In this document: positions 1,379 to 51,174 of the stretch, one piece after another
How the letters are laid out: each line of letters starts with the position of its first letter
How positions within the stretch are numbered: the stretch's first letter is position 1
Assembly (NCBI RefSeq): GCF_021869535.1
Contig: NW_026262668.1
Coordinates: 95,356,001-95,420,000, forward strand
Direction of reading: 5' to 3'
From: Mytilus californianus
Lineage: Eukaryota
Length of the DNA: 64,000 bases
Program-made: the position numbers and the translations under genes
Notes under the pieces: model-generated
The model's input: the letters and a program-made list of their open reading frames with translations, nothing else
Told to the model about the DNA's origin: nothing
Databases searched by the model: none

Positions 1379-18252
<16,874 letters not shown>

Positions 18253-20130: not shown

Positions 20131-22619
20131 TTCTGTTATAAATTAGGTCGTTAGTTTTCTCAATTGAATCGTTTCATATATTTCATGTCGGGCCTTTTAT
20201 AGCCGACTATACGGTAGGTTTTCCTCATTGTTAAAGGTCGTACGGTTGCCTATAATTGCTTACATCCACTTCGTTTGAACTTTGGTGGATAGTTGTCTCA
20301 TTGGCAATCATACCACATCTCTTTTTTTTTTAAACTGAAACAGCAAAAATTGTCTACAATACAAGATCTACAAAAATGTTCAATGATTGAAACCTCAACT
20401 ACCTCGAAAACAAAAGTAACTATCTTTTAGTTTCAGCAAAATAGATGTAAATCGTGTTAACTATTCATCCTACAAACTTTCATTTCAAATCCAACAACGG
20501 CATTTTTATAGAAATATATATTTTTTAACATAGATGTACTGAAAATTTGTCATTTTATAATTTGACCAAAATATGAAATGAGTATTCTGAATGAATATCT
20601 GGTCTTCAGAGTAAATTGAAATAAGACCTTTTTCACAAGTTTCGTGCGTTCGAAGCGCCTTTCTTGTTTAGCCTTTTCCAGGAACGTTCAAACCTAAACA
20701 TCAATATTGAATACGTAGAAAGGTTGTCAGCTATATGATCAAAAGGGACCAAAAAGATAACTGTCAAACTACATGTGAATCAATTATGGATACTGCAAAA
20801 ATCCAAACGGCACTTCAATCCCTTAGTGGTAGGGTGAGCAGCTGAGACATCCAGTACCCTACCCTTTTCGTATATTTTGAATATTAAAAAAAATACATAC
20901 TCTATCGTATATTTTATGACCGTGAAAAATTATAGCAATATCTATTAGTAATCAGAACAATCGAGTCCCTTTATACAATTATGCTGGACGGTCGAAAAGT
21001 TCAAATTCTTCACGCGCGATTACGAATGAACAGTAATTCATTGAACTGTCACCTATTTCAAAGAAATTTAGTAGATTCTCCACAATCTCGCATTTTTTTA
21101 AATTATTTTTCCTATCATATGCAGACATATAAGACAAGAAATAATAATGTCATTTGAAGGGTTAGAATTAACTGTACTTAAGGACAATGAATTACTATCA
21201 AACGGTTCAAATCTGATTTCAAATGAAGAATACATTAGTTTATTTGTTATGGCACAAAGGTTCATAATTAAATCTAAAAGGTTTACAAACTAATAATTCA
21301 CACAATATACCTGTTAGCATTTCATATTAATAGTTGTTTTTTTCAGATCATCGTGAAACTTAATTGACATTTTCAATGTTTTTATTATGTGACAGAGTAT
21401 GTAAAAATTTATTTTTGTAAATTGTACTCAATTCAATTAGGAGACAAATTAATACAAGCATGTGTTGCTTGTTTCTGAATCCTATTTGCCAAAATGTGAA
21501 CTTATATTGTATAAGATGTATTTAATTCATAATAAAATATTGTTTAAACTAAATATGGCTAAATTATATCGTGACTGCATTCTTTCATGGTAGCCACCGT
21601 AGATCAACAGAATATAACGACTGAATTATTCGGGTTAGTATCCGGGGATTCGACCAATCGATACGCATGGCCGCTGTTACTAAAAATAGAACATAGAGGT
21701 AAAACTGCAGTTTTGACAGGCTTATATCCAAAAACCAAAGCAGTAATAGGTTAAAACTGACATGAATGCAGGTTAAGGTCTATCTACCTTAAAACTTTTC
21801 GAAAATATTATTACGTATTTTGGAGTTGTTGGCTTTGAAATGTTCAGTTGACGTGACAAATTTCGCAACTTTGTTGTTATCATTCTGGAAATTATTAAGA
21901 CAAAGAGAAACTTTAGGTGCAAAAATGACCAGCAAAGTAAGATCTGCACACAAGTCAACATGACCGAAACCGTTACTTACCACCTCAAAGCTGGGACAAA
22001 ATATATAGTATACTATTCCCCGCTAAAAGGAATACAGAATCTAACTGCCTTATATGAGTTTTTGTCCTTGGATGACGATTTTTAACTTTTTTGTGTTTTT
22101 TTTTGTGCTATAATTTTGAAAACTAGAAAAAGTGATACATTGAACTTGAAAATGATCAGATAACAAAGATCTAGAAACAAGTCCAGATAGCCAAAATCAT
22201 CAATAATTGACCCCTTCAAGGAGTTATTGACCTAGAATTTCTAATTTTGCCCATTTATATGTATTTGATAGAAATTATAGTAAATCAGTAAAATTATACC
22301 TACAAATAAGTAAAAAGTGACTGAAATCGTTAGGCTACTCGGTTTGTGATTTATTGCCCTTACTTGGTAATTTTTTATACACAATTTAAGCGTTTTTACC
22401 TAATATATTGAAAGTTCTAATAGATAAACTGAAACATTGTGTACCATAAAAGATCAGCAACAAAATATCTACAAATTATTTTATATGAACAAAGTTGTCA
22501 ATCTACTCCTAAGTCCGAATTTAAATCTTTTTAATATGTTTGCTTATTATCTTTAACACTTTTATGGATATACAGGAAATTTGCTTCAGAAAAAATAATC
22601 AGCAAGACAAGATTTTATT

Positions 22620-23060: not shown

Positions 23061-24140
23061 CATTTTTTTAATGTTTGTGCATGTTGTTGATATTGGTAGC
23101 GGTCTTGTCCTATCATTTGGTAGAAAACTGAACTGTTTTAATTTCAAACTCCACCTATTCGATCACGTTTTAGGGTTTGAGAATTTACATGTGCAACTGG
23201 TTTATAAATTGTGTAATGTCAGCTTTAGTGAAGAGACATTTGCCAATCCGTTATAAAGCCTACTATGTAATGACTTAAAACTTGATATGTTTCATCATCG
23301 GGTTTTGACAGGAGTAAAAAAAACAGGTATCACGACTGACTGTTAGAGCAGGAACTATTGCATCTCGGAGCACCTGAGACCCTTCTCCAAATTTTTTTAA
23401 TGGGTTTGTGTAATTCACTCTTATCTTTGTGTTTGAGAATTGTTTGCATTTATTCTTTCCCTTTTCACAAAAAATAGATCAAATTTTAAAACGGAAGACC
23501 GAATGCACAGTATCCATTGTTTAAGTACACATAATTTCATATAGGAAGTTAATAAACAAAAATCAATTGTTAAACACTTATAGATTTCCTGTTTACTGGT
23601 TGTGTTATTTGACCAATCGTGTGAACTGAATAAATATGTAGTGATTCACGGCCGTGTCTGTTACTAGGAGGACCCGGTATTGCTTTTTGAAACCTGGTAT
23701 TGGTATTTGGAAACCGGTATTGGCATCCGATATTGGTATTGGGAACCTGGAATGGTAAAGAACTCTTAGAGTTAATCCAACAGCACGAGAAACTAGCAAA
23801 CGTTACAATAATTAGGGAACACGTCAGACCAAAACTTTCCAGATATTACAGTCATTTTCAAGTCGCGCCATAACTTCCGTCTCTCTACACAATTTTTTTA
23901 CTACAATGATTGCAATTGAGAATACGGAAAATACCCAAAATATCCATTTAAATGGGGCAACATATATAAAAAGATAAATGGTTAGTCTTCTTTATTTTGT
24001 TTTTCTACCATTATAAAATTCGAATAATACCACTGAACGTCCTTCCACTAGTGTAGTATATAGAAATCATCAAATATTTTGTCGCAGCCTTTAAAATGTC
24101 TCCTTTGCAACAAGAGAGTAAATAACTGTATATTTTTAAA

Positions 24141-24761
24141 AGGGCATATATTAACAGTTACAGGGGCGGTAATGACGTTGCTAACGTAAAATGTTATTTT
24201 GGCGACGTCAAACTGTGACATATCGGGAAAAGATGTATTTTTCGACTGATTTTTATCATTCAAACTGATTTAACTTGAAAACGAGTTCATGGACCCCTCT
24301 TTTTTAAAATTACATTCGGTTTGATTACGTATGAAGATTATTTGTACCAATTTTCATGAAAAAGTCAATAATGCATTTTTTTTAAATTTGATCAATATAT
24401 AGCAAAAAATGACGTTTTTTTCTACATTCATGAACATTTGATGAATTTGAGTTATTTCTAAACAAAAGATTTCATAAATTTATAGGATACTTATAAAAAA
24501 CACAAATTACAAATAATTTAACAAAAAACAGCTTGTGTTTATCTTTTAAAACAAAAAAGTTATGCATTTCTGTCGGAAGGTAAATGCGTCCACAAATCCG
24601 AATTTTGAGCAAATATCTGAAATTTCGAACTCATTTTACTCAAAAAGTAGCACATGAAGGTATATTTTTTATTACATATTTGATTTAATCAGGTAAAAAA
24701 TAGCCTATTTGCAAATATTCATCAAATTTTCATTATGGGATCAAAACTGTATCGTATGCCC
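24141..24761. mobile_element. Kolobok-like MITE
   Basis: Ends AGGGCATATATTAACAGTT ... AACTGTATCGTATGCCC followed by TTAA (24762-24765); TIR starting with purines and TTAA target suggest Kolobok; left TIR degenerate. Confidence 0.5.
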
Positions 24762-24981
24762 TTAACCTATTTCCGTACCTCGGTTAAATTCTTAATCAAA
24801 GAATACATTACTATTGTATAAAGTTTAATAATGGTGCCTAAATATGATAGTCACTATAAACATTCAAAGGTTGATACAGTCTATTCAAGGAACAACAGTA
24901 CAGTATTTGAAAAGGTTGCACTGTCAATTGGGGACGATGGCAACTTTTCAAATACGGTACAGTTATTTTTAGTCTTATACA

Positions 24982-25407
24982 GTGTTCGTGATGTTCAAAA
25001 TATCCCGGAACCGTCGTCTTATTTGAGATGTGCAGCGTTTGGGATGTTCAAAATATCCCGGAACCGTCGTCTTATTCGAGATGATGCAGTGTTTGGGATG
25101 TTCAAAATATCCCGGAACCATCGTCTTATTCGAGATGATGCAGTGTTTGGGATGTTCAAAATATCCCGGAACCATCGTCTTATTCGAGATGATGCAGTGT
25201 TTGGGATGTTCAAAATATCCCGGAACCATCGTCTTATTCGAGATGATGCAGTGTTTGGGATGTTCAAAATATCCCGGAACCGTCGTCTTATTTGAGTTGT
25301 GCAGCGTTTGGGATGTTAAAAATATCCCGGAACCGTCGTCTTATTCGAGATGATGCAGTGTTTGGGATGTTCAAAATATCCCGGAACCGTCGTCTTATTC
25401 GAGATGC
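24982..25407. repeat. Minisatellite, 54-bp unit, about 8 copies
   Basis: Unit GTGTTTGGGATGTTCAAAATATCCCGGAACCATCGTCTTATTCGAGATGATGCA, near-identical head-to-tail copies. Confidence 0.95.
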
Positions 25408-25914
25408 TACAATGGTTTGCTGTTAAAAGTATCTGTAAATCAATTAGAGTTTAAAAAGGAATAAGCAAAAAACTTTTCAATAAAAGAGAGGCGAATGATA
25501 CCAAAGGGACATTCAAACCGATAAGTCGAAAATAAACTGACATTGCCATGGTCAAAAAGGAAAAAGACAAACAGACAAAGAACAGTAAACAAAACAACAC
25601 GGGAAACCAAAGACTGAGCAACACGAACCCGTACAAGGTGTCAGTCGATGGTTTCAATCATTGAACATTTTTGTATATCTTGTATTGTAGAACATTTTTG
25701 CTGTTTCAGTTTCTAAATTAAAAAAGGAGATGAGGTATGATTTACAATGAGATAACTATCCATCATGTTCAAATGAAGTGAATGTAAGGAATTATTGGCA
25801 ACCGTACGTCTGTTTATTTAGGGTACTCTCAACGTAAAAGGAAAAACACTATGATTGATACAAAATCGTCATTTAAGAACTTCTAAAAATGAAAATAACA
25901 CTTACACAGTTTCC

Positions 25915-26950
25915 GTCTGAAGCGCTTTTCATGATTTGCCTTCATATAGTACACGACAACGCCAGAAGCTGTATGAGCAATGGTGACCTAAAAAGAATAC
26001 CCAAATTCATTCAAGGTTAACTTTGCCTGAGGGAGTTGAAACCTTAGTTTTGAAAAAAAAATAGTGACGGGGAATGTAAGAGAAAAAAGTGTTATAAATC
26101 ATATCAGTACCGAAGCACTGACCACTGAGCTAATTATACCACCAGGGACAAAAGTCCATAAACAGTGGTATCGACCCAGTGCTAGTAAATGAAAATAACT
26201 TTAATATAATTTAGTGCGTCCGAAGCGGTTTTCTGGATTTACATTTATCAGGAACGCTCAAAACCCAAAAATGTTGAAAGCCTAGATTGAATAAGACTTG
26301 ATAACGTGAGGAGTTTTATGACAAAAGAATAGCTTATCTTCTCAAACAAAATGAATATTACACTTTATAATTTCATGCGTCCGAAGCGTTTTTCTGGATT
26401 TACCTTCAGCTGGACGAATATTTGAAAACCAAGGATGTATCAGAATAGAAACAGTTGAAGAGCTATATGGTCAAACAGGACCTAAAATAACATTAACCAA
26501 AATCGTCTAAGGTCAACTTTGCATGCAGGGGAGTTGAAACTTTAGTTTCTGAAAAATTTCAAAGTTTATGAAGGGACAATTTAAGAAAAGTTTGTTATAA
26601 ATCATGTCAGTACCGAAGTACTTACTGCTAATATGATAATACCTCTGGGAACTAATAATTATAGTCCACCAGCAGCGGTATCGCCCAAGTGCTATAAGAA
26701 ATGCAGAGTATTACTTTGAAATATCATGCTTCCGAAGCGCTCTTCCGGATTTAACTTCATCAGGAACGCTCAAGGCCGAAGGATGTATAAGAACCGATAC
26801 AGCTGAAGAGCTATATGACTTTGCCTGAGGGAGCTGAAACTCGACAACTAAACGGACATTTAAGACAGGTCTGTTATAGATTATGTCAGTAACGAAGTAC
26901 TGACTACTGAGCTGATGATACCCTCGGGGACTGATAATCTACCAGCAGCG
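25915..26950 (-). mobile_element. Tandem array of ~330-350-nt retrozyme-like repeat carrying a type I hammerhead-like motif (decayed copies)
   Basis: The motif GCGTCCGAAGCGCTTTTCTGGATTTACCTTCATCAGGAACGC (plus strand) recurs at ~25914, 26216, 26377, 26728; its reverse complement folds as GCGUUC-CUGAUGA-AGGUAAAUCCA-GAA-AAGCGCUU-C-GGACGC. Related copies at ~20640-20770, 41990-42367, 49986-50370. Confidence 0.7.
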
Positions 26951-27859
26951 TAGTCAATTGATGGTTTCAGTCGTTACGTATATTATAAAATTTTGTAAAT
27001 CTTGTTTTGAGGATATATTTTTCTGATCCCAGTATCTGTCTTTTTATATTAGTTTTCACGATAAGAAAAAAAACCCGCTAATATTGGTCAAAAATCGATA
27101 CCTATAACTCCTATAAAGAGTTGTCTGACAATTTTCACCTTGTAATTTTTACTTCCTCCAGAATTTGTCTTTTATGGGTTTAAAGTTGTACATCTCTAAT
27201 GTATATGCAGAAATTCTAGAAAATTAGACTGTTTAAAACTCAGTGTAGGAGGAGTTGAATACACATACTCTTTCCTGGTCGCCAGATGTAAGACGCTTTA
27301 CACTATTACACCTTTAAAGTTTTCATACGAATCTTATCTTTTCATTTGGAGTTTATCAAAGAACAATACGACGAAAGCGCACGTATTCTAACCCTCCCAG
27401 GGAACCTGGTTATTTCCGGACGAACATATTACATGTTGTTTATCATTTCATAATTAGGATAAACTGCCTCAACCATAACCTAATATATGCAGTGTATTGA
27501 TTTTTTTTATTTACTTGAAGTATTACATTTATTACACCCACTTATAAGGCGTCATATACAAACGTATTAATTGATAAACATGAAGGCAACTGGAACAAAC
27601 AGGTGACATATTTCAAACTTAGTATTAAACAAATTATCAATTGATTGTCATTGGCAATTGTAATTGTTAAACAATAAATTTTGGTTTACCATTAAATATT
27701 CAAACGTACTTTGGGTGTGTTATTAAATGTTATTCTCCTACATATGCAAAAAATTCTCTTACGTGCACGATGCAAACAACAAATGAATTACTTTTGCTCG
27801 AGGCTACGTCTTCCGTGTACTAATATATAAATATAAGGATTCATGCACAAACTGCGAAA

Positions 27860-27948
27860 CAAAGGTAATCAATCCAGTTAATTGTTGTATTTTATTTATA
27901 TAATTTATCACTTACAGTCCCAGTCTTATTTATTTTAACAAGCACAAG
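27860..27948 (+). other. Putative non-coding 5' UTR exon of the Pif-like gene
   Basis: The ATG at 29307 is immediately preceded by an acceptor (ttttttcacttcag), implying an upstream exon; a strong donor AAG|GTAAGT lies at 27948/27949 and TATA-like TATAAATA at about 27826-27833. Start coordinate approximate. Confidence 0.45.
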
Positions 27949-29306
27949 GTAAGTCAATATTTTGTTACAATAGGAAGTCATTAAACAATAACTTCAGGAT
28001 TGAAAATAATACATAATAACTTGTATATCTATATTTATGTGTAATATGTACGTCTAGTTTGTGTATAAAGAAAAGTGTGCATTCACGCTGTTTTCGAATT
28101 AGTCTTTCTCAATTGATATATATATTGTTTGTAAATCATTATTATAACTTTAATTTCAAATTGTTCAGAGTATAAAATTGCATTAAAAAATTTAGTTATG
28201 ATCTGTAATATATCTGATTTGGGAAACAATTATGCTTGCAACTGCCGATCTCTACTTTTGATTATTTTCAAATTAACAAACAAACAAACAAACGAACGAA
28301 CAATCAAATAAATACATTGATAAATAAATAAATCCTAGTATGATAAGAAACACGATCTAGTTAATATGGGATAGCTGACAACCTTGTCGTGTCAGTTTTA
28401 TTGTTAATTTTAATTCCATAAATTCATTGTGCGGCACGACTAAAATTTATGTTGACCAGACAAGACCATATTTTACTTTTTTAAACAAAGGATATGAGGT
28501 AAATAATGCATAATTATGTATATATTTATACTTCTATAAAAAAAAATATGCATGTATGTTAACGTATATAGTACTATTGTGACAATTTTTGAATGACTTT
28601 ACGATGGTATTTATGACAAGATGATTATTATATGACATGTTTGCTCATTTATCCTTATGTTCATTTGAATAAAAGGTCAAACAGTGTATCTGGAGTATAC
28701 ACTACAGATAGATATGTCGGACAGAAAAACATACATATAGCTGGTCTTTTGATTTGGAAAAACTTTAAAACACGAAAATGCATCGTTCATTATAATTCAT
28801 GTCAATGACAAAGGTATAGCATGTAATGATCGACTGTGATCATCCATCTTTTACAACTTTGATGAATTTGGGGTTTTTTTTTTCTTTGTTTATCCAGATT
28901 TGGTTTAAAAATTGAAATGATAAAGAATGGAATTCAATAGAATCAAGTATAAAACAAAACGAAAGAACGAACGAACGATACATCTTAGCAATATAAGGTT
29001 AAATGCTCAAGATTTAATGAAAATATGAATGATCATTTTGTTTGCATTGTTTCGCTAATACCATTAATAATATAAAAGTAAAATGGAAAGGCAACCAATT
29101 AGCATATATGAACTGTAAAGAAACCAATATTTGGACCGGACCCTCATCTATGTATACGACTCGATTTATATTGAATTGCTAGTCTTTATCGCCACTTGTG
29201 TAAATACATTATCCATGTTTAACCTGTTTGGGAGATTTTGAATTACAGGGAAAAATCAACTAAAGATTGTTTAAAACTTAAATTATAAACATTTTTTTCA
29301 CTTCAG

Positions 29307-40242: not shown

Positions 40243-40759
40243 AAAAATCAGTCTGTCAATTTCTATACTAATTTTATTGTAATTGTCATGCAATAGGTGA
40301 TAGGTAGTAATTTTGAATTGGTATAAAAAAACTAAGCTTTCATACAATTTTTCTTTTGAAAAGTCTTCTATATTCATAAGAATCAGACATTATTTGAATT
40401 AAAACATCTTATATTCAGTAAAATATATGTGAAATTACAATACGTTGTTAGTAAGTTTCCATGGGAGATAATCAATTTTTCCTTCGAACAGTCTTCTATA
40501 TTCATACGAATAATGATTTTAGATTATCTCCCATGGAAACTTATTAACAACGTATCGTAATTTCACATATATTTTACTGAATATAAGATGTTTTAATTCA
40601 AATGATGTCTGATTCTTATGAATATAGAAGATTTTTTCCAAAGAAAAAATGTATGAAAGCTTAGTTTGGACATTTTTATAGCAATTCAAAATTACTTCCT
40701 ATCACCTATTGCATGACAATTACAATACAATTTGTATAGAAATGGATAGACTTATTTTT
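40243..40759. repeat. Fold-back palindrome, ~230-bp arms, 48-nt spacer
   Basis: 40243-40473 is the reverse complement of 40522-40759 with few mismatches. Confidence 0.9.
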
Positions 40760-41989
40760 CATTATATCATTGCAGTGACAGGATTGTAAGTATGCTTTAT
40801 TCGATCCCCTTGCACTTTCACGACTTCACTGTTTTTGTACATCAGGTTGTTAAAATTTTGACTAGTTGAACAGTTTGGTTTGATAAAACAAATTGCAATT
40901 TGGTCAGAATTTTTAATAAACTGCAATAGATGGAGAGCAACACTTACAGTCAAGTCACAGTAATGCCGGACAAGTATTTGATTTAAATATTAAACAATAT
41001 AATAGATAACAAAAACATAATTACAAACAAATATAATTTATAATATACAATTTAGTAGTCTACAATTTTACAGTATCGAAGAAAGCTCGCAGTTATTGAA
41101 AGCAAGCTCAAAATATACGTAACCCGCTAATGTGAAATCGTTCTGTCCTTCACTCTGATAAGGTTGCTGCACTTCATAACGAAAATATTACTTCCGTAGA
41201 AATCCGAGATGTCACTGACAACACGCGACTATCGACATAACTAAGAAATGTACTGAAACACCATAAGAAGGAGCCAATGAAACATCACCGTCAAGAAAAG
41301 AAAAATTAATAATACAATGGAAATGTCATAAATTTCGATATTAGGATGGGCATGAGAAATCAAGATATCGATTTCCAAAAAAACGGACATCGGTCATCAT
41401 TAATGTTTGATTGAGTAAGATAATAGAAAATGGAAAAAATGAGTTGTATGTTTAGAAAAAATCTTGATAGTTAACAGAGAGTGTATCGTCTATATATCTG
41501 CAGGCGTTGTAAAAATATGTATTAAGTGTTCTGTTTCGTAGGGTCTTTACGAAGTTATGCCATAAATTGTCCCTCATAACAAGTAAGAAATAAGTCTACA
41601 ATAAAAAGGTACACACTTGAAATACCATCGGAAAACAAATCAATTGTGGTATAATTTATCTTCCAAAAAAAACAGAAATGTCTCTGCATGTCAAATATTT
41701 CAAGTTTTATTACTTACAAAAAATAAAGGCATTGTAACAACTGCAATAGATGTAACAAGGAAACCTTTAATAAAAAAGTTTCTCTATGATTAGATCGTGT
41801 GGTAGTGTAACACACAGAGTAAAAAGTCATAATTGCCAGCGGAGACAAATAAACATACAAAAAACGCGTATCTTAACCAGACACATATAATAACATGGTA
41901 GTATAAGTCTCTCGTTCAACTAAGACGTCGAAAGAACTTTTTACATTCCAGAAAAAGTAAAAAAAAAATAAACAACAGTTTATAGATTT

Positions 41990-42367
41990 CATGCGTCCGA
42001 ATTGCTATTCTGGATCTACCTTCATCAGGAACGCTGGAAGCCAAATATTTGAAAGCCAAGGATGTATTAGAACCGAAACAGTTAAAATTCTATATTAACA
42101 AAAAGGACGTAGAAAAATAACCAAATCCACGGGGACGATAGTCCACCAGCAGCGGTATCGACCCAGTGCTGTAAAAAATGAAAACAACACTTTATAAATT
42201 TCATGTGTCCTAAGCGCTTTCCTGGATTTACCTTCATCAGGAACGCTTAAAGTCAAATATGTGAAAGCCAAGGATGTAGAAGAACCGAAACAGTTGAAGG
42301 GCTGTATGACCAAAAAGGAACTACAAATCCATCTAAGGTCAACTTTACCTGAGGGAGTTGAAACCTT
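41990..42367 (-). mobile_element. Retrozyme-like repeat, two hammerhead-like motifs (41993-42034, 42205-42246)
   Basis: Same family as 25915-26950; both motifs keep CUGAUGA and stem I, with mutations in G12A13A14 or stem III. Confidence 0.65.
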
Positions 42368-42509
42368 ACAATGTAGCAAAATCATAAAAGACAAAATACA
42401 TATCTAAACAAGTGGCAGACGATACCAAAGGGAGAATCAGAGGTACGAGTATTTACAGAAAGCATGTTCAAAGTTCACTTTCAACTAATACATAGACCAT
42501 GTTTGTCCT

Positions 42510-49985: not shown

Positions 49986-50370
49986 AGGTAAATCCAGAAC
50001 GCTTCTGACGCTTGAAATTTATGTTTTACAGTAACTTGGTCGATACCTCTGCTGGTGGACTATCAGTCCCTGAGGATATCATCAGCTCAGTAGTCAGTAC
50101 TTCGGTACTGACATGATTTATAACAAACCTTTCTAAAATTGTCCATCAATAAATTTCAAAATTACCTGAAATTAAGGTTTCAACTCCCTCAGGCAAAGTT
50201 GACCTTAGATGGATTTGGCTACTTTTTGTAGGTCCTTTTTGGTTATTTAGCTCTTCAACTGTTTCTGTATACACCCTTGGCTTTCAAATATTCAGCTTTT
50301 AGTGTTCCTGATGAAGGTAAATCTAGAAATGCGCTTCAGACGTATGAAATTTATAATGTGTTGTTTTCCT
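49986..50370 (+). mobile_element. Retrozyme-like monomer in the opposite orientation
   Basis: Partial motif AGGTAAATCCAGAACGCTTCTGACGC at 49986, full motif GTGTTC-CTGATGA-AGGTAAATCTA-GAA-ATGCGCTT-C-AGACGT at 50302-50343; 329 nt between equivalent positions. Confidence 0.65.
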
Positions 50371-51174
50371 TTTTAACCTAGCTCCTATAGGTTTTTAGAT
50401 AACAGCAAAAACAGTAAATATCAACTTTTCAGGGGCAATAACTTCAAAAAAGGGTTTTGAAACTTCCAGAGTAAATGGATCCTGTCATGCTGATCATTTT
50501 GCAGTTTACACTTTTAATCTAGCTCCTTTGGCTTTAAGATTACAACCAAAAACTGCAAAAATGGATATTTCAGGGGCAATATCTCCAAAATAGGCCAACA
50601 CAATTCAAGGGTAGGTACATCTTGTTGTGCTGATTCCTTTTTGTAATTTACAATTTTAACCTAGCTTCTATAATGTTCAGGAAAACAGCCAATAACTGCT
50701 AGAATCGGGAAGAAATATAAGTTTTCAAGGTCATTAACTCCAAAACAAGTTGTTAGATTTTTCTCCAATTTTCAGGATGGATACCTCTCGTTATGCTGAT
50801 CATTATTTCAATTTGCACTTTTAAGCTAGCTCCTATAGTTTTTGAAACAATGGCAAGGAAATGCAAAAAAAGTACCAACATTTCAGGAACATTGACTACA
50901 AAATTCAAAATTTTCATGGTAGATGGAACTTGTTGTGGTGACCATTTTTATCCTTTTCAATGTTGTTCTAATTGCTATAGCTTGAGAAATGTGGAGAATT
51001 TTGTGCAGTTAGCAACATTTTGTTTCTGCTTATTTGATTCACAACTTTTATGAGACTAATGACCATTTAGAGCTTGAAATATTGTATAGACACATGTCTA
51101 TTGTTGAAGAATGTATGTTGTCCTCTATATGTCTTTAGGTTATTTTTGTCATTGGGTTGCTGCCACAGCAAATT

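What the first reader, a model, noticed from the sequence alone, without database searches (positions are those of the whole stretch)
25915..26950. Tandem ~350-nt repeat with a hammerhead ribozyme consensus (retrozyme-like, circRNA candidate)
Consensus of the copies on the minus strand folds as a type I hammerhead: stem I GCGUUC/GGACGC (one G-U), core CUGAUGA, short stem II GG/CC with UAAAU loop flanked by an unusual A-A in place of the usual G10.1-C11.1, GAA, and stem III AAGCGCUU, a perfect palindrome with only 2 bp intramolecularly, then cleavage triplet UUC. Palindromic minimal stem III is the signature of PLE-associated hammerheads that cleave as dimers; tandem 170-400-nt units with type I hammerheads are non-LTR retrozymes that yield circular RNAs, reported in mussels among other animals (recalled literature). 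Each copy here carries a different core mutation (26216: CUGAUAA; 26377: deletion; 26728: A15.1 to G), so these copies are probably inactive, but the family may be a distinct variant with a non-canonical stem II junction.
Basis: partly seen in the sequence, partly recalled or inferred. Interest (0 to 1): 0.8.

Follow-up and report, generated by a model that had tools for sequence, protein, structure and literature searches.

The report
Decayed mussel hammerhead retrozyme array
This is a worn-out, roughly four-unit copy of an abundant non-coding mussel jumping element (a retrozyme) whose repeats carry a self-cutting hammerhead RNA motif; the class is already published for Mytilus, but this family's oddly built ribozyme seems undescribed and untested.

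Summary
On the minus strand, window 26950-25885 carries four hammerhead-like motifs spaced 351, 161 and 303 nt apart.

The copies belong to a dispersed family, here called V:
- The unit is 352 nt, 37% G+C, with no ORF.
- The intact motif CUGAUGA-AGGUAAAUCCA-GAA-AAGCGCUU-C occurs 2,107 times exactly in this genome.

V is a sister of the published Mytilus retrozyme Mg353 (Cervera and de la Pena 2020), whose hammerhead type occurs 4,152 times here.
- The bodies are homologous: 61% identity overall, 82% in a structured block.
- The catalytic core is identical.
- Stems I, II and III differ by compensatory changes.
- The usual G10.1-C11.1 pair is an A-A mismatch.
- Rfam scores the published type just under threshold and does not see V at all.

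In 65 V insertions the 5' ends vary, the 3' end is fixed about 41 nt past the cleavage site, and short junction repeats are enriched. This is the pattern of retrotransposition, and the published family shows the same fixed end.

RNA reads were inconclusive for cleavage or circles.

Verdict: an ordinary relic of a known class, and a new family member with an untested non-canonical ribozyme. The scan has already met this family on other DNA (s1-320606 and others).

The parts
25885..26950 (-). Whole decayed retrozyme insertion (V family). It is 5'-truncated, starting at consensus position ~c61, and ends at the family's fixed 3' end (~c39).
   Evidence: BLAST of the 352-nt family consensus against the window; family 3' end
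26849..26948 (-). First partial unit, c61-161 (conserved structured block), followed by a deletion of c162-252
   Evidence: 90% identity
26728..26771 (-). Hammerhead copy 1. CUGAUGA is intact (26763-26757), but A15.1>G (26742), 11.1 A>G (26746), 10.3 G>U and 1.4 C>A. Predicted cleavage after C 26734.
26383..26733 (-). The only full-length unit (351 nt, c1-352)
26377..26417 (-). Hammerhead copy 2. A 3-nt deletion inside CUGAUGA (reads CUGA-AGG) and a degenerate 5' strand of stem I. C17 at 26383.
26222..26382 (-). 161-nt unit: an internal-deletion derivative (c1-40 joined to c249-352)
26216..26259 (-). Hammerhead copy 3. CUGAUAA (G8>A at 26246), 10.2 G>U, helix III G>C. C17 at 26222.
25919..26221 (-). 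Fourth unit (303 nt): c1-246, then a diverged or deleted stretch, then c326-352
25911..25950 (-). Hammerhead remnant 4. CUGAUGA is lost (CUAUAUGA), 1.1 G>A. C17 at 25919.
25885..25918 (-). 3' tail (c1 to ~c39) ending in the T-run where almost all family insertions end

Best explanation
The stretch is one old insertion of a non-autonomous, non-coding retroelement of the metazoan non-LTR retrozyme class. It originally spanned about 3.9 units and is now riddled with deletions and point mutations.

Shown:
- It belongs to a family of 352-nt units with thousands of dispersed copies.
- The family's consensus carries an intact type I hammerhead core and is homologous, body and ribozyme, to the published Mytilus retrozyme.
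- Insertions have variable 5' ends, one fixed 3' end about 41 nt downstream of the ribozyme cleavage site, and short junction repeats.
- All four ribozyme copies in the window are broken.

Inferred, by analogy with the published sister family and from the anatomy:
- Master arrays are transcribed, and hammerheads cut out unit-length RNAs. They probably pair two by two through the 8-nt palindrome AAGCGCUU, because the intramolecular helix III is only 2 bp.
- A tRNA-type ligase circularises these RNAs.
- A reverse transcriptase supplied in trans, most likely from a Penelope-like element, starts cDNA synthesis at a fixed internal site. This site lies just 5' of the conserved structured block (c46-130).
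- The enzyme runs through the ribozyme and round the template for a variable distance. This gives 5'-truncated solo fragments, dimers and multimers.

The window copy is a dead product of that process and has no function of its own.
For: Family and intact motif: (47 units, mean pairwise identity 90%).

Homology to the published element: construct and circRNA consensus in PMC7229834 supplement. The same hammerhead string occurs 4,152 times in this genome. Unit alignment is 61% overall and 82% in c46-130.

Fold conserved between the two families:
- 87% of cells are paired in stems I and III, against 18-43% when slid.
- Two pairs show changes on both sides: 1.1-2.1 G-C/U-A and 15.2-16.2 A-U/C-G.
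- Stem II pairs 10.2-11.2 and 10.3-11.3 are also exchanged compensatorily (alignment).
- All core positions are identical.

Retrotransposition anatomy:
- 3' ends lie at c37-44 in 47 of 65 insertions by BLAST. Most of the rest show the same tail by eye.
- 5' ends are spread from c17 to c330.
- Junction repeats are enriched: 5 nt or more in 49% against 27% of permuted pairs, permutation p 0.001.
- The published-type family ends at the homologous position.

Helix III: the 2-bp hairpin is +4.7 kcal/mol, against -10.1 for the 8-bp intermolecular duplex. The active published ribozyme shows the same pattern, +2.4 and -13.3.

Class features: 37% G+C, longest open frame 72 aa.

Partners available: at least 1,480 GIY-YIG candidates, many in 755-911-aa open frames.

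Literature on Penelope origin and dependence: PMC8557442 and bioRxiv 10.64898/2026.07.22.740005.

Window copies broken.
Against: - No self-cleavage, circle or unit-length RNA has been shown for this family.
- Raw RNA reads cross the predicted cleavage sites without any pile-up of ends. Their depth could be explained by traces of genomic DNA, given thousands of copies.
- The A10.1-A11.1 mismatch replaces the most conserved helix II pair. The only natural mismatch reported there is U-U, said to be the best-tolerated mispair (PMC3088659). Activity may therefore be low.
- Rfam's type I model does not score V even at E 10.
- The hammerhead is no better conserved among copies than the rest of the unit.
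- No insertion starts at the cleavage site, so genomic anatomy gives no trace of cleaved templates.
- The circular MFE of the V unit is not unusual (z -1.3).
- The reverse-transcriptase partner was not identified.
Confidence: 0.85

Rival explanations
1. The V family is a SINE-like parasite whose hammerhead is a vestige. It spreads because a reverse transcriptase recognises its 3' module or structured block on ordinary linear, uncleaved transcripts. Self-cleavage and circles play no part. The A-A mismatch reflects relaxed constraint on catalysis.
For: - Every insertion contains an uncut ribozyme junction followed by the 41-nt tail.
- 26 of 40 insertions in the unbiased sample are shorter than one unit, with a single hammerhead.
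- 5' ends cluster at c274-294 (16 of 65; 8 of 40 in the unbiased set, against 2.4 expected). This could mark a defined linear RNA 5' end.
- There is no read-end pile-up at the cleavage sites.
- The A-A sits at the most conserved helix II pair.
Against: - All 13 core positions and H17 are unchanged between V and the active published ribozyme, although the units differ at 27-33% of aligned sites around it.
- Four stem pairs changed on both sides while keeping pairing. This is not expected of a vestige.
- The sister family has the same insertion anatomy and is experimentally a circRNA producer (PMC7229834).
Confidence: 0.25
2. The stretch is ordinary satellite DNA that grew locally by unequal crossing-over. 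The hammerhead resemblance is chance.
For: Tandem arrangement with irregular unit lengths.
Against: - There are 2,107 exact 30-nt motifs dispersed over all large contigs, and none for the reversed control.
- Insertions have a fixed 3' end with variable 5' truncation and unrelated flanks.
- The unit is homologous to a ribozyme proven active.
Confidence: 0.02
3. The units are terminal repeats (pLTRs) of an autonomous Penelope-like element rather than a separate non-autonomous family.
For: - Penelope elements carry hammerheads near their 3' ends and 30-40-bp tails (PMC8557442).
- Vertebrate retrozymes are related to pLTRs.
Against: - Units follow each other head to tail every 350-353 nt with no ORF between them.
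- The V consensus has no BLAST match to the Naiad copy in the window.
- Helix sizes differ from Penelope minimal hammerheads.
Confidence: 0.05

Closest known systems
Mytilus galloprovincialis non-LTR retrozyme Mg353 with hammerhead families A/B (Cervera and de la Pena, Nucleic Acids Res 2020, PMC7229834)
   Same: - Unit size is similar: 352 nt against 350-390 nt.
- Both have low G+C and no ORF.
- The body is homologous, including the block CACUGGGUCGAU...GUCAGYACUUCUGURCUGAC.
- Both carry a type I hammerhead with an identical core, a 6-bp stem I, a 2-bp helix III inside an 8-nt palindrome, and C17.
- Both have the same fixed insertion 3' end position.
- Both families coexist in this genome.
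   Different: - Stem II is A-GG-UAAAU-CC-A instead of GUC-N7-GAC, so the G10.1-C11.1 pair is replaced by A-A.
- Helix III is AAGCGCUU instead of ACGCGCGU.
- The 1.1-2.1 pair is G-C instead of U-A.
- Identity is only 61% overall.
- The published divergent primers would not match V, so none of the published cleavage, northern or circRNA data covers it.
- Rfam RF00163 gives 32.5 bits for the published type and nothing for V.
Amphibian satellite 2 / axolotl retrozymes (Epstein and Gall 1987; Forster et al. 1988; PMC7229834)
   Same: Tandem units of about 330-350 nt. Type I hammerhead with an unstable palindromic helix III that cleaves efficiently only as a dimer.
   Different: No sequence homology. 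The amphibian stem II is canonical.
Minimal hammerheads of Penelope-like elements (Cervera and de la Pena 2014, PMC4209133)
   Same: A palindrome at 15.2-16.2, proposed dimeric action, and an extra unpaired nucleotide between A9 and stem II, if the V motif is read as A-bulge plus G10.1-C11.1.
   Different: Penelope minimal motifs have a long helix II (6-8 bp), a short helix I (4-5 bp) and no or almost no helix III, and they sit in pLTRs around an RT/GIY-YIG ORF. V has a 2-bp helix II, a 6-bp helix I and an extra A on both sides of helix II, and there is no ORF.
Natural hammerheads with a U10.1-U11.1 mismatch (Perreault et al. 2011, PMC3088659)
   Same: The most conserved helix II pair is replaced by a mismatch in a natural, otherwise canonical hammerhead. 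Two-bp stems II are common.
   Different: Here the mismatch is A-A. The paper cites U-U as the best-tolerated mispair, so A-A is expected to be worse. Activity of the V motif is untested.

Membership tests
Hammerhead ribozyme, type I | Conserved core C3-U4-G5-A6-N7-G8-A9 ... G12-A13-A14, A15.1-U16.1, H17 | tested here: met
   Met by the family consensus. NOT met by any of the four copies in the finding: G8>A, a 3-nt deletion, A15.1>G, and loss of CUGAUGA.
Hammerhead ribozyme, type I | Three-helix junction with open stem I, supported by compensatory change | tested here: met
   In stems I and III, 87% of cells are paired against 18-43% when slid, and two pairs changed on both sides between V and the published type. 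Stem II pairs 10.2-11.2 and 10.3-11.3 are exchanged, U-A>G-C and C-G>G-C (read).
Hammerhead ribozyme, type I | G10.1-C11.1 (or another Watson-Crick) pair closing helix II | tested here: not met
   A-A in 2,107 exact copies. Single-base variants at either position total only 42 and 47 copies. The pair-restoring A>U is not enriched over the family's A-substitution spectrum (chi-square about 4.3, 2 df).
Hammerhead ribozyme, type I | Match to Rfam RF00163 at gathering score | tested here: not met
   No hit in the window at gathering or at E<=10. No hit in intact V copies of L027 at E<=10, while the published type in L031 scores 32.5 and 28 bits against a gathering score of 34.
Hammerhead ribozyme, type I | Site-specific self-cleavage | not testable with these tools
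   Raw RNA reads show no excess of ends at the predicted sites, but random-primed libraries are a weak test.
Metazoan non-LTR retrozyme | Head-to-tail units of about 170-400 nt, each with a type I hammerhead | tested here: met
   Spacings of 344-361 nt, up to 10 or more units per array.
Metazoan non-LTR retrozyme | Low G+C (<45-50%), no ORF, no LTR/PBS/PPT | tested here: met
   37% G+C, longest stop-to-stop frame 72 aa in a tetramer. No terminal repeats other than the units themselves.
Metazoan non-LTR retrozyme | Sequence homology to a characterised retrozyme | tested here: met
   61% overall and 82% in c46-130 to genomic copies of the Mg353 type. These copies carry the published hammerhead string.
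Metazoan non-LTR retrozyme | Dispersal by retrotransposition | tested here: met
   Fixed 3' end at c37-44, variable 5' truncation, unrelated flanks, junction repeats enriched with p 0.001.
Metazoan non-LTR retrozyme | Expression as unit-length linear and circular RNA | tested here: inconclusive
   Reads with the V-type ribozyme are present in RNA runs X21 and X8. Neither circles, nor ends, nor exclusion of DNA carry-over could be shown. Strand-biased reads in X22/X23 are of the published type.
Penelope-like element minimal hammerhead / pLTR | Helix II of 6-8 bp, helix I of 4-5 bp, no helix III; located in repeats flanking an RT/GIY-YIG ORF | tested here: not met
   V has a 2-bp helix II, a 6-bp helix I and a 2-bp helix III, and no ORF between units.

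The most novel reading that the evidence does not exclude
The V-family motif is a catalytically competent natural hammerhead in which the near-universal G10.1-C11.1 pair is replaced by an A-A mismatch (or a symmetric A/A insertion). It would act as a dimer through its palindromic helix III. Mussel retrozymes of both families would be copied by a telomerase-related Penelope-type reverse transcriptase that starts at a fixed internal site, immediately 5' of a conserved structured RNA block, on a circular or multimeric template. That would explain the invariant 3' end and the multimeric, 5'-truncated insertions.
Probability: 0.35. Interest if true: 0.55.

Novelty: new member of a known kind. Interest (0 to 1): 0.3.

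Why it matters
The locus itself does not matter: it is a dead copy.

The family is of modest interest to ribozyme and transposon specialists, for two reasons:
- It is an abundant, recently active natural hammerhead lineage. It keeps every catalytic nucleotide and shows compensatory stem changes, yet lacks the most conserved helix II pair. Standard descriptors and Rfam miss it. Published mussel counts of about 5,000 motifs in two families therefore probably undercount hammerheads.
- The insertion anatomy shared by both mussel families is a fixed 3' end next to the best-conserved block, with variable 5' ends. This gives a concrete, testable handle on how retrozyme RNA is reverse-transcribed, which the literature still treats as a tentative model.

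Tried and rejected
- Tandem Repeats Finder on 24000-29000 found no array at the locus because the copies are too diverged.
- Rfam at gathering score and at E<=10 gave no hammerhead in the window.
- A strict gapped DNA pattern for an intact motif gave 0 matches in the window.
- Thermodynamic folding does not discriminate. The hammerhead fold of an intact V copy is -3.8 kcal/mol against an MFE of -12.8, and the proven-active published ribozyme is just as unfavourable (-0.4 against -15.1).
- I asked whether insertions start preferentially at the cleavage site, which would be a genomic trace of cleaved templates. Four apparent starts at c1-c3 turned out, on inspection of the junctions, to continue upstream. 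I rejected the idea.
- I asked whether pair-restoring variants at 10.1/11.1 are enriched. They are not significantly.
- tRNA-like or Pol III origin of the GGGTCGATACC block: ARAGORN finds nothing, and the many internal T-runs argue against Pol III. Dropped.
- Conservation profile: the ribozyme is not better conserved among copies than the body, as expected for neutrally decaying copies. This is uninformative.
- Read laying on a young dimer with four RNA runs showed no end pile-up at the cleavage sites. The 'goes back' joints correspond to shorter-unit variants, not demonstrable circles.
Exact V or published-type motifs on contig C1 do not lie within 5 kb of listed GIY-YIG hits. This is a weak negative.
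- Full-text search for the motif string found no paper.
- ORFs near the array have no Pfam match.

Full report
**What is there**

On the minus strand, window 26950-25885 holds four copies of a hammerhead-like motif. The predicted cleavage-site Cs are at 26734, 26383, 26222 and 25919, giving unit lengths of 351, 161 and 303 nt.

Tandem Repeats Finder sees no array, and ungapped copy identity is only 66-80%.

Against the family consensus the array reads c61-161, c253-352, c34-352, c1-40, c249-352, c1-246 and c326-352, then a 34-nt tail. It began as about 3.9 units and has since lost internal pieces. The 161-nt 'unit' is a deletion derivative.

At aligned sites the units differ from the consensus by 9-19%. 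Typical copies differ by 2-12%. This is an old copy.

**The ribozyme copies in the window are dead**

- Copy 1 has A15.1>G plus three stem changes.
- Copy 2 lacks 3 nt of CUGAUGA.
- Copy 3 has G8>A.
- Copy 4 has lost the 5' core box.

**The family**

A search of the window's own 1.65-Gb genome with one unit gave 4,057 first-look candidates. Matches occur on all large contigs, often in arrays with 350-353-nt spacing.

This 30-mer occurs 2,107 times exactly, and the reversed control occurs 0 times.

Forty-seven distinct full units give a 352-nt consensus with mean pairwise identity 90%. The consensus has 37% G+C and no frame longer than 72 aa. I call this family V.

**Relation to what is published**

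Cervera and de la Pena (2020, PMC7229834) described about 5,000 type I hammerheads in Mytilus galloprovincialis, in two closely similar families:
- They sit in 350-390-bp repeats.
- They self-cleave in vitro with kobs of about 0.1 per minute.
- They are abundant as circular RNA in gonad and mantle.

Their construct Mg353 carries GAGCGUCA CUGAUGA GUC-UUUUGUA-GAC GAA ACGCGCGU C UGGCGU. That motif, with loop 2 free, occurs 4,152 times in this genome. Both families therefore coexist here.

A V unit aligns with such a unit at 61% overall. By region the identities are 67%, 82%, 75%, 69% and 73%. The best is c46-130, a predicted long imperfect hairpin plus an 8-bp hairpin that shows a compensatory U-A/C-G change.

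In the ribozyme, all core nucleotides, A15.1-U16.1 and C17 are identical. The stems differ as follows:

| Pair | Published type | V family | Kind of change |
|---|---|---|---|
| 1.1-2.1 | U-A | G-C | both sides, pairing kept |
| 1.2-2.2 | G-C | G-U | one side, pairing kept |
| 1.3-2.3 | G-U | A-U | one side, pairing kept |
| 1.6-2.6 | U-G | C-G | one side, pairing kept |
| 15.2-16.2 | C-G | A-U | both sides, pairing kept |
| 10.2-11.2 | U-A | G-C | both sides, pairing kept |
| 10.3-11.3 | C-G | G-C | both sides, pairing kept |
| 10.1-11.1 | G-C | A-A | pair lost |

Only the 10.1-11.1 pair is lost. In stems I and III, 87% of cells are paired, against 18-43% with slid partners.

Both families keep an 8-nt palindrome as helix III. 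Intramolecularly it is a +2.4 to +4.7 kcal/mol 2-bp hairpin. Between two molecules it is a -10 to -13 kcal/mol duplex. This is the general metazoan type I design that works as a dimer (PMC4209133), not a Penelope-specific trait.

Rfam's type I model scores the published type at 32.5 bits, just under the gathering score of 34. It gives nothing for intact V copies at E<=10.

No paper in the library contains the V motif string. The published hammerhead descriptor (GAAAY, RUH, perfect helices) would not accept it. I therefore take V to be an undescribed sister family. This rests on a limited literature search.

**How the family spreads**

I examined 65 independent insertions. Twenty-five came from the similarity search. 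Forty were taken in order along contig C1 from the exact-motif list.

- The 3' boundary is at c37-44 wherever BLAST reaches it. The same T-rich tail is visible by eye in most others.
- The 5' boundary lies anywhere from c17 to c330.
- Flanks are unrelated between loci.
- In the unbiased 40, 26 insertions are shorter than one unit.
- Short direct repeats at the two junctions are enriched over permuted pairs: 5 nt or more in 49% against 27%, p 0.001.

This is the pattern of target-primed reverse transcription from a fixed start with incomplete extension.

Twelve insertions of the published type end at the homologous place, about 40-48 nt past the cleavage site and just before the conserved block.

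Every copied template therefore contained an intact c352-c1 junction and extended 3' of it. This fits a religated circle or an uncleaved multimer.

That initiation occurs next to the conserved block, and that the enzyme is of Penelope type, are inferences. The genome has at least 1,480 GIY-YIG candidates, many in long open frames. The literature links retrozymes to Penelope elements.

A post-hoc cluster of 5' ends at c274-294 remains unexplained (16 of 65; 8 of 40 in the unbiased set, against 2.4 expected).

**Is the V ribozyme active?**

This is unknown.

For activity:
- The core is intact and stems changed compensatorily despite 27-33% divergence around them.
- The family was recently active, with copies 97-100% like the consensus.

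Against activity:
- The A-A sits at the most conserved helix II pair. The only natural mismatch reported there is U-U, described as the best-tolerated mispair (PMC3088659).
- Pair-restoring variants are not enriched.
- Four RNA runs give no end pile-up at the cleavage sites.

Reads with the V ribozyme exist in two RNA runs, but DNA carry-over cannot be excluded given thousands of copies. Strand-biased reads in two other runs are of the published type.

**Surroundings**

- No gene is evident within several kb. ORFs of 90 aa or more nearby have no Pfam match.
- The window holds at least three more V insertions, at 50021-50375, 42368-41960 and 20701-20652, and a 54-nt minisatellite at 24980-25406.
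The V consensus has no BLAST similarity to it.

**Earlier scan notes**

The same family was met on other DNA of this genome. Note s1-320606 was followed up. Notes s1-320692, s1-279560 and s1-282054 are first readings. I re-derived the copy number, the odd stem II and the fixed end independently here.

**Organism**

Several results point to a Mytilus-type mussel:
- The published M. galloprovincialis ribozyme string matches exactly.
- A run holding the sequence is labelled 'mollusc metagenome'.
- The genome is 1.65 Gb.

I did not establish the species.

**Verdict**

The locus is an ordinary, dead relic of a known class. The family is a new member with a non-canonical, untested hammerhead. Interest is low to moderate.

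Noticed in passing
window 50021-50375 (+): Another V-family insertion (c34-352 plus the 3' tail, about 87% to consensus). Its hammerhead keeps CUGAUGA and GAA but has 15.2 A>U, 11.2 C>U and 1.1 G>A. It ends at the family's fixed 3' end.
   Followed up: partly
window 41960-42368 (-): A V-family insertion with internal deletions and two hammerheads, one with A13>G and C17>A, the other with A15.1>U. A further hammerhead remnant lies at 20652-20701 (-), and a 34-nt fragment at 40309-40342.
   Followed up: partly
window 24980-25406: Minisatellite of 7.9 copies of a 54-nt unit (95% matches), about 480 nt beyond the 3' end of the retrozyme array. An artefactual 154-aa ORF runs through it.
   Followed up: no
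65 V-family insertions in loci L002-L030 and L043-L082 (consensus coordinates): 5' ends of V-family insertions cluster at consensus positions c274-294 (16 of 65; 8 of 40 in the unbiased sample against 2.4 expected). This gives size classes of about 110, 460 and 820 nt. The window was chosen post hoc, and the cause is unknown: an RNA 5' end, an RT stop or a joining preference.
   Followed up: partly
L031-L042, around position 1532-1580: Insertions of the published Mg353-type retrozyme also end at one fixed point, about 40-48 nt past the cleavage site. This is homologous to the V-family end and lies directly 5' of the block best conserved between the two families.
   Followed up: partly
L015, about 1931-1990 (minus orientation): A V-family insertion sits inside loop 2 of a published-type hammerhead (nested retrozymes).
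   Followed up: no
G000:C110:55838761-55860851 and other places: GIY-YIG domains in 755-911-aa open frames, some in tandems with 3,927-bp spacing. These are probably intact Penelope-like elements and candidate suppliers of reverse transcriptase. The DNA could not be fetched.
   Followed up: no
L027:1-60 (+): Weak SECIS_1 match (23.3 bits against a gathering score of 35, E 0.51), cut off by the locus start, beside a V array. It is possibly the SECIS of a neighbouring Naiad-type element noted elsewhere in this genome.
   Followed up: no
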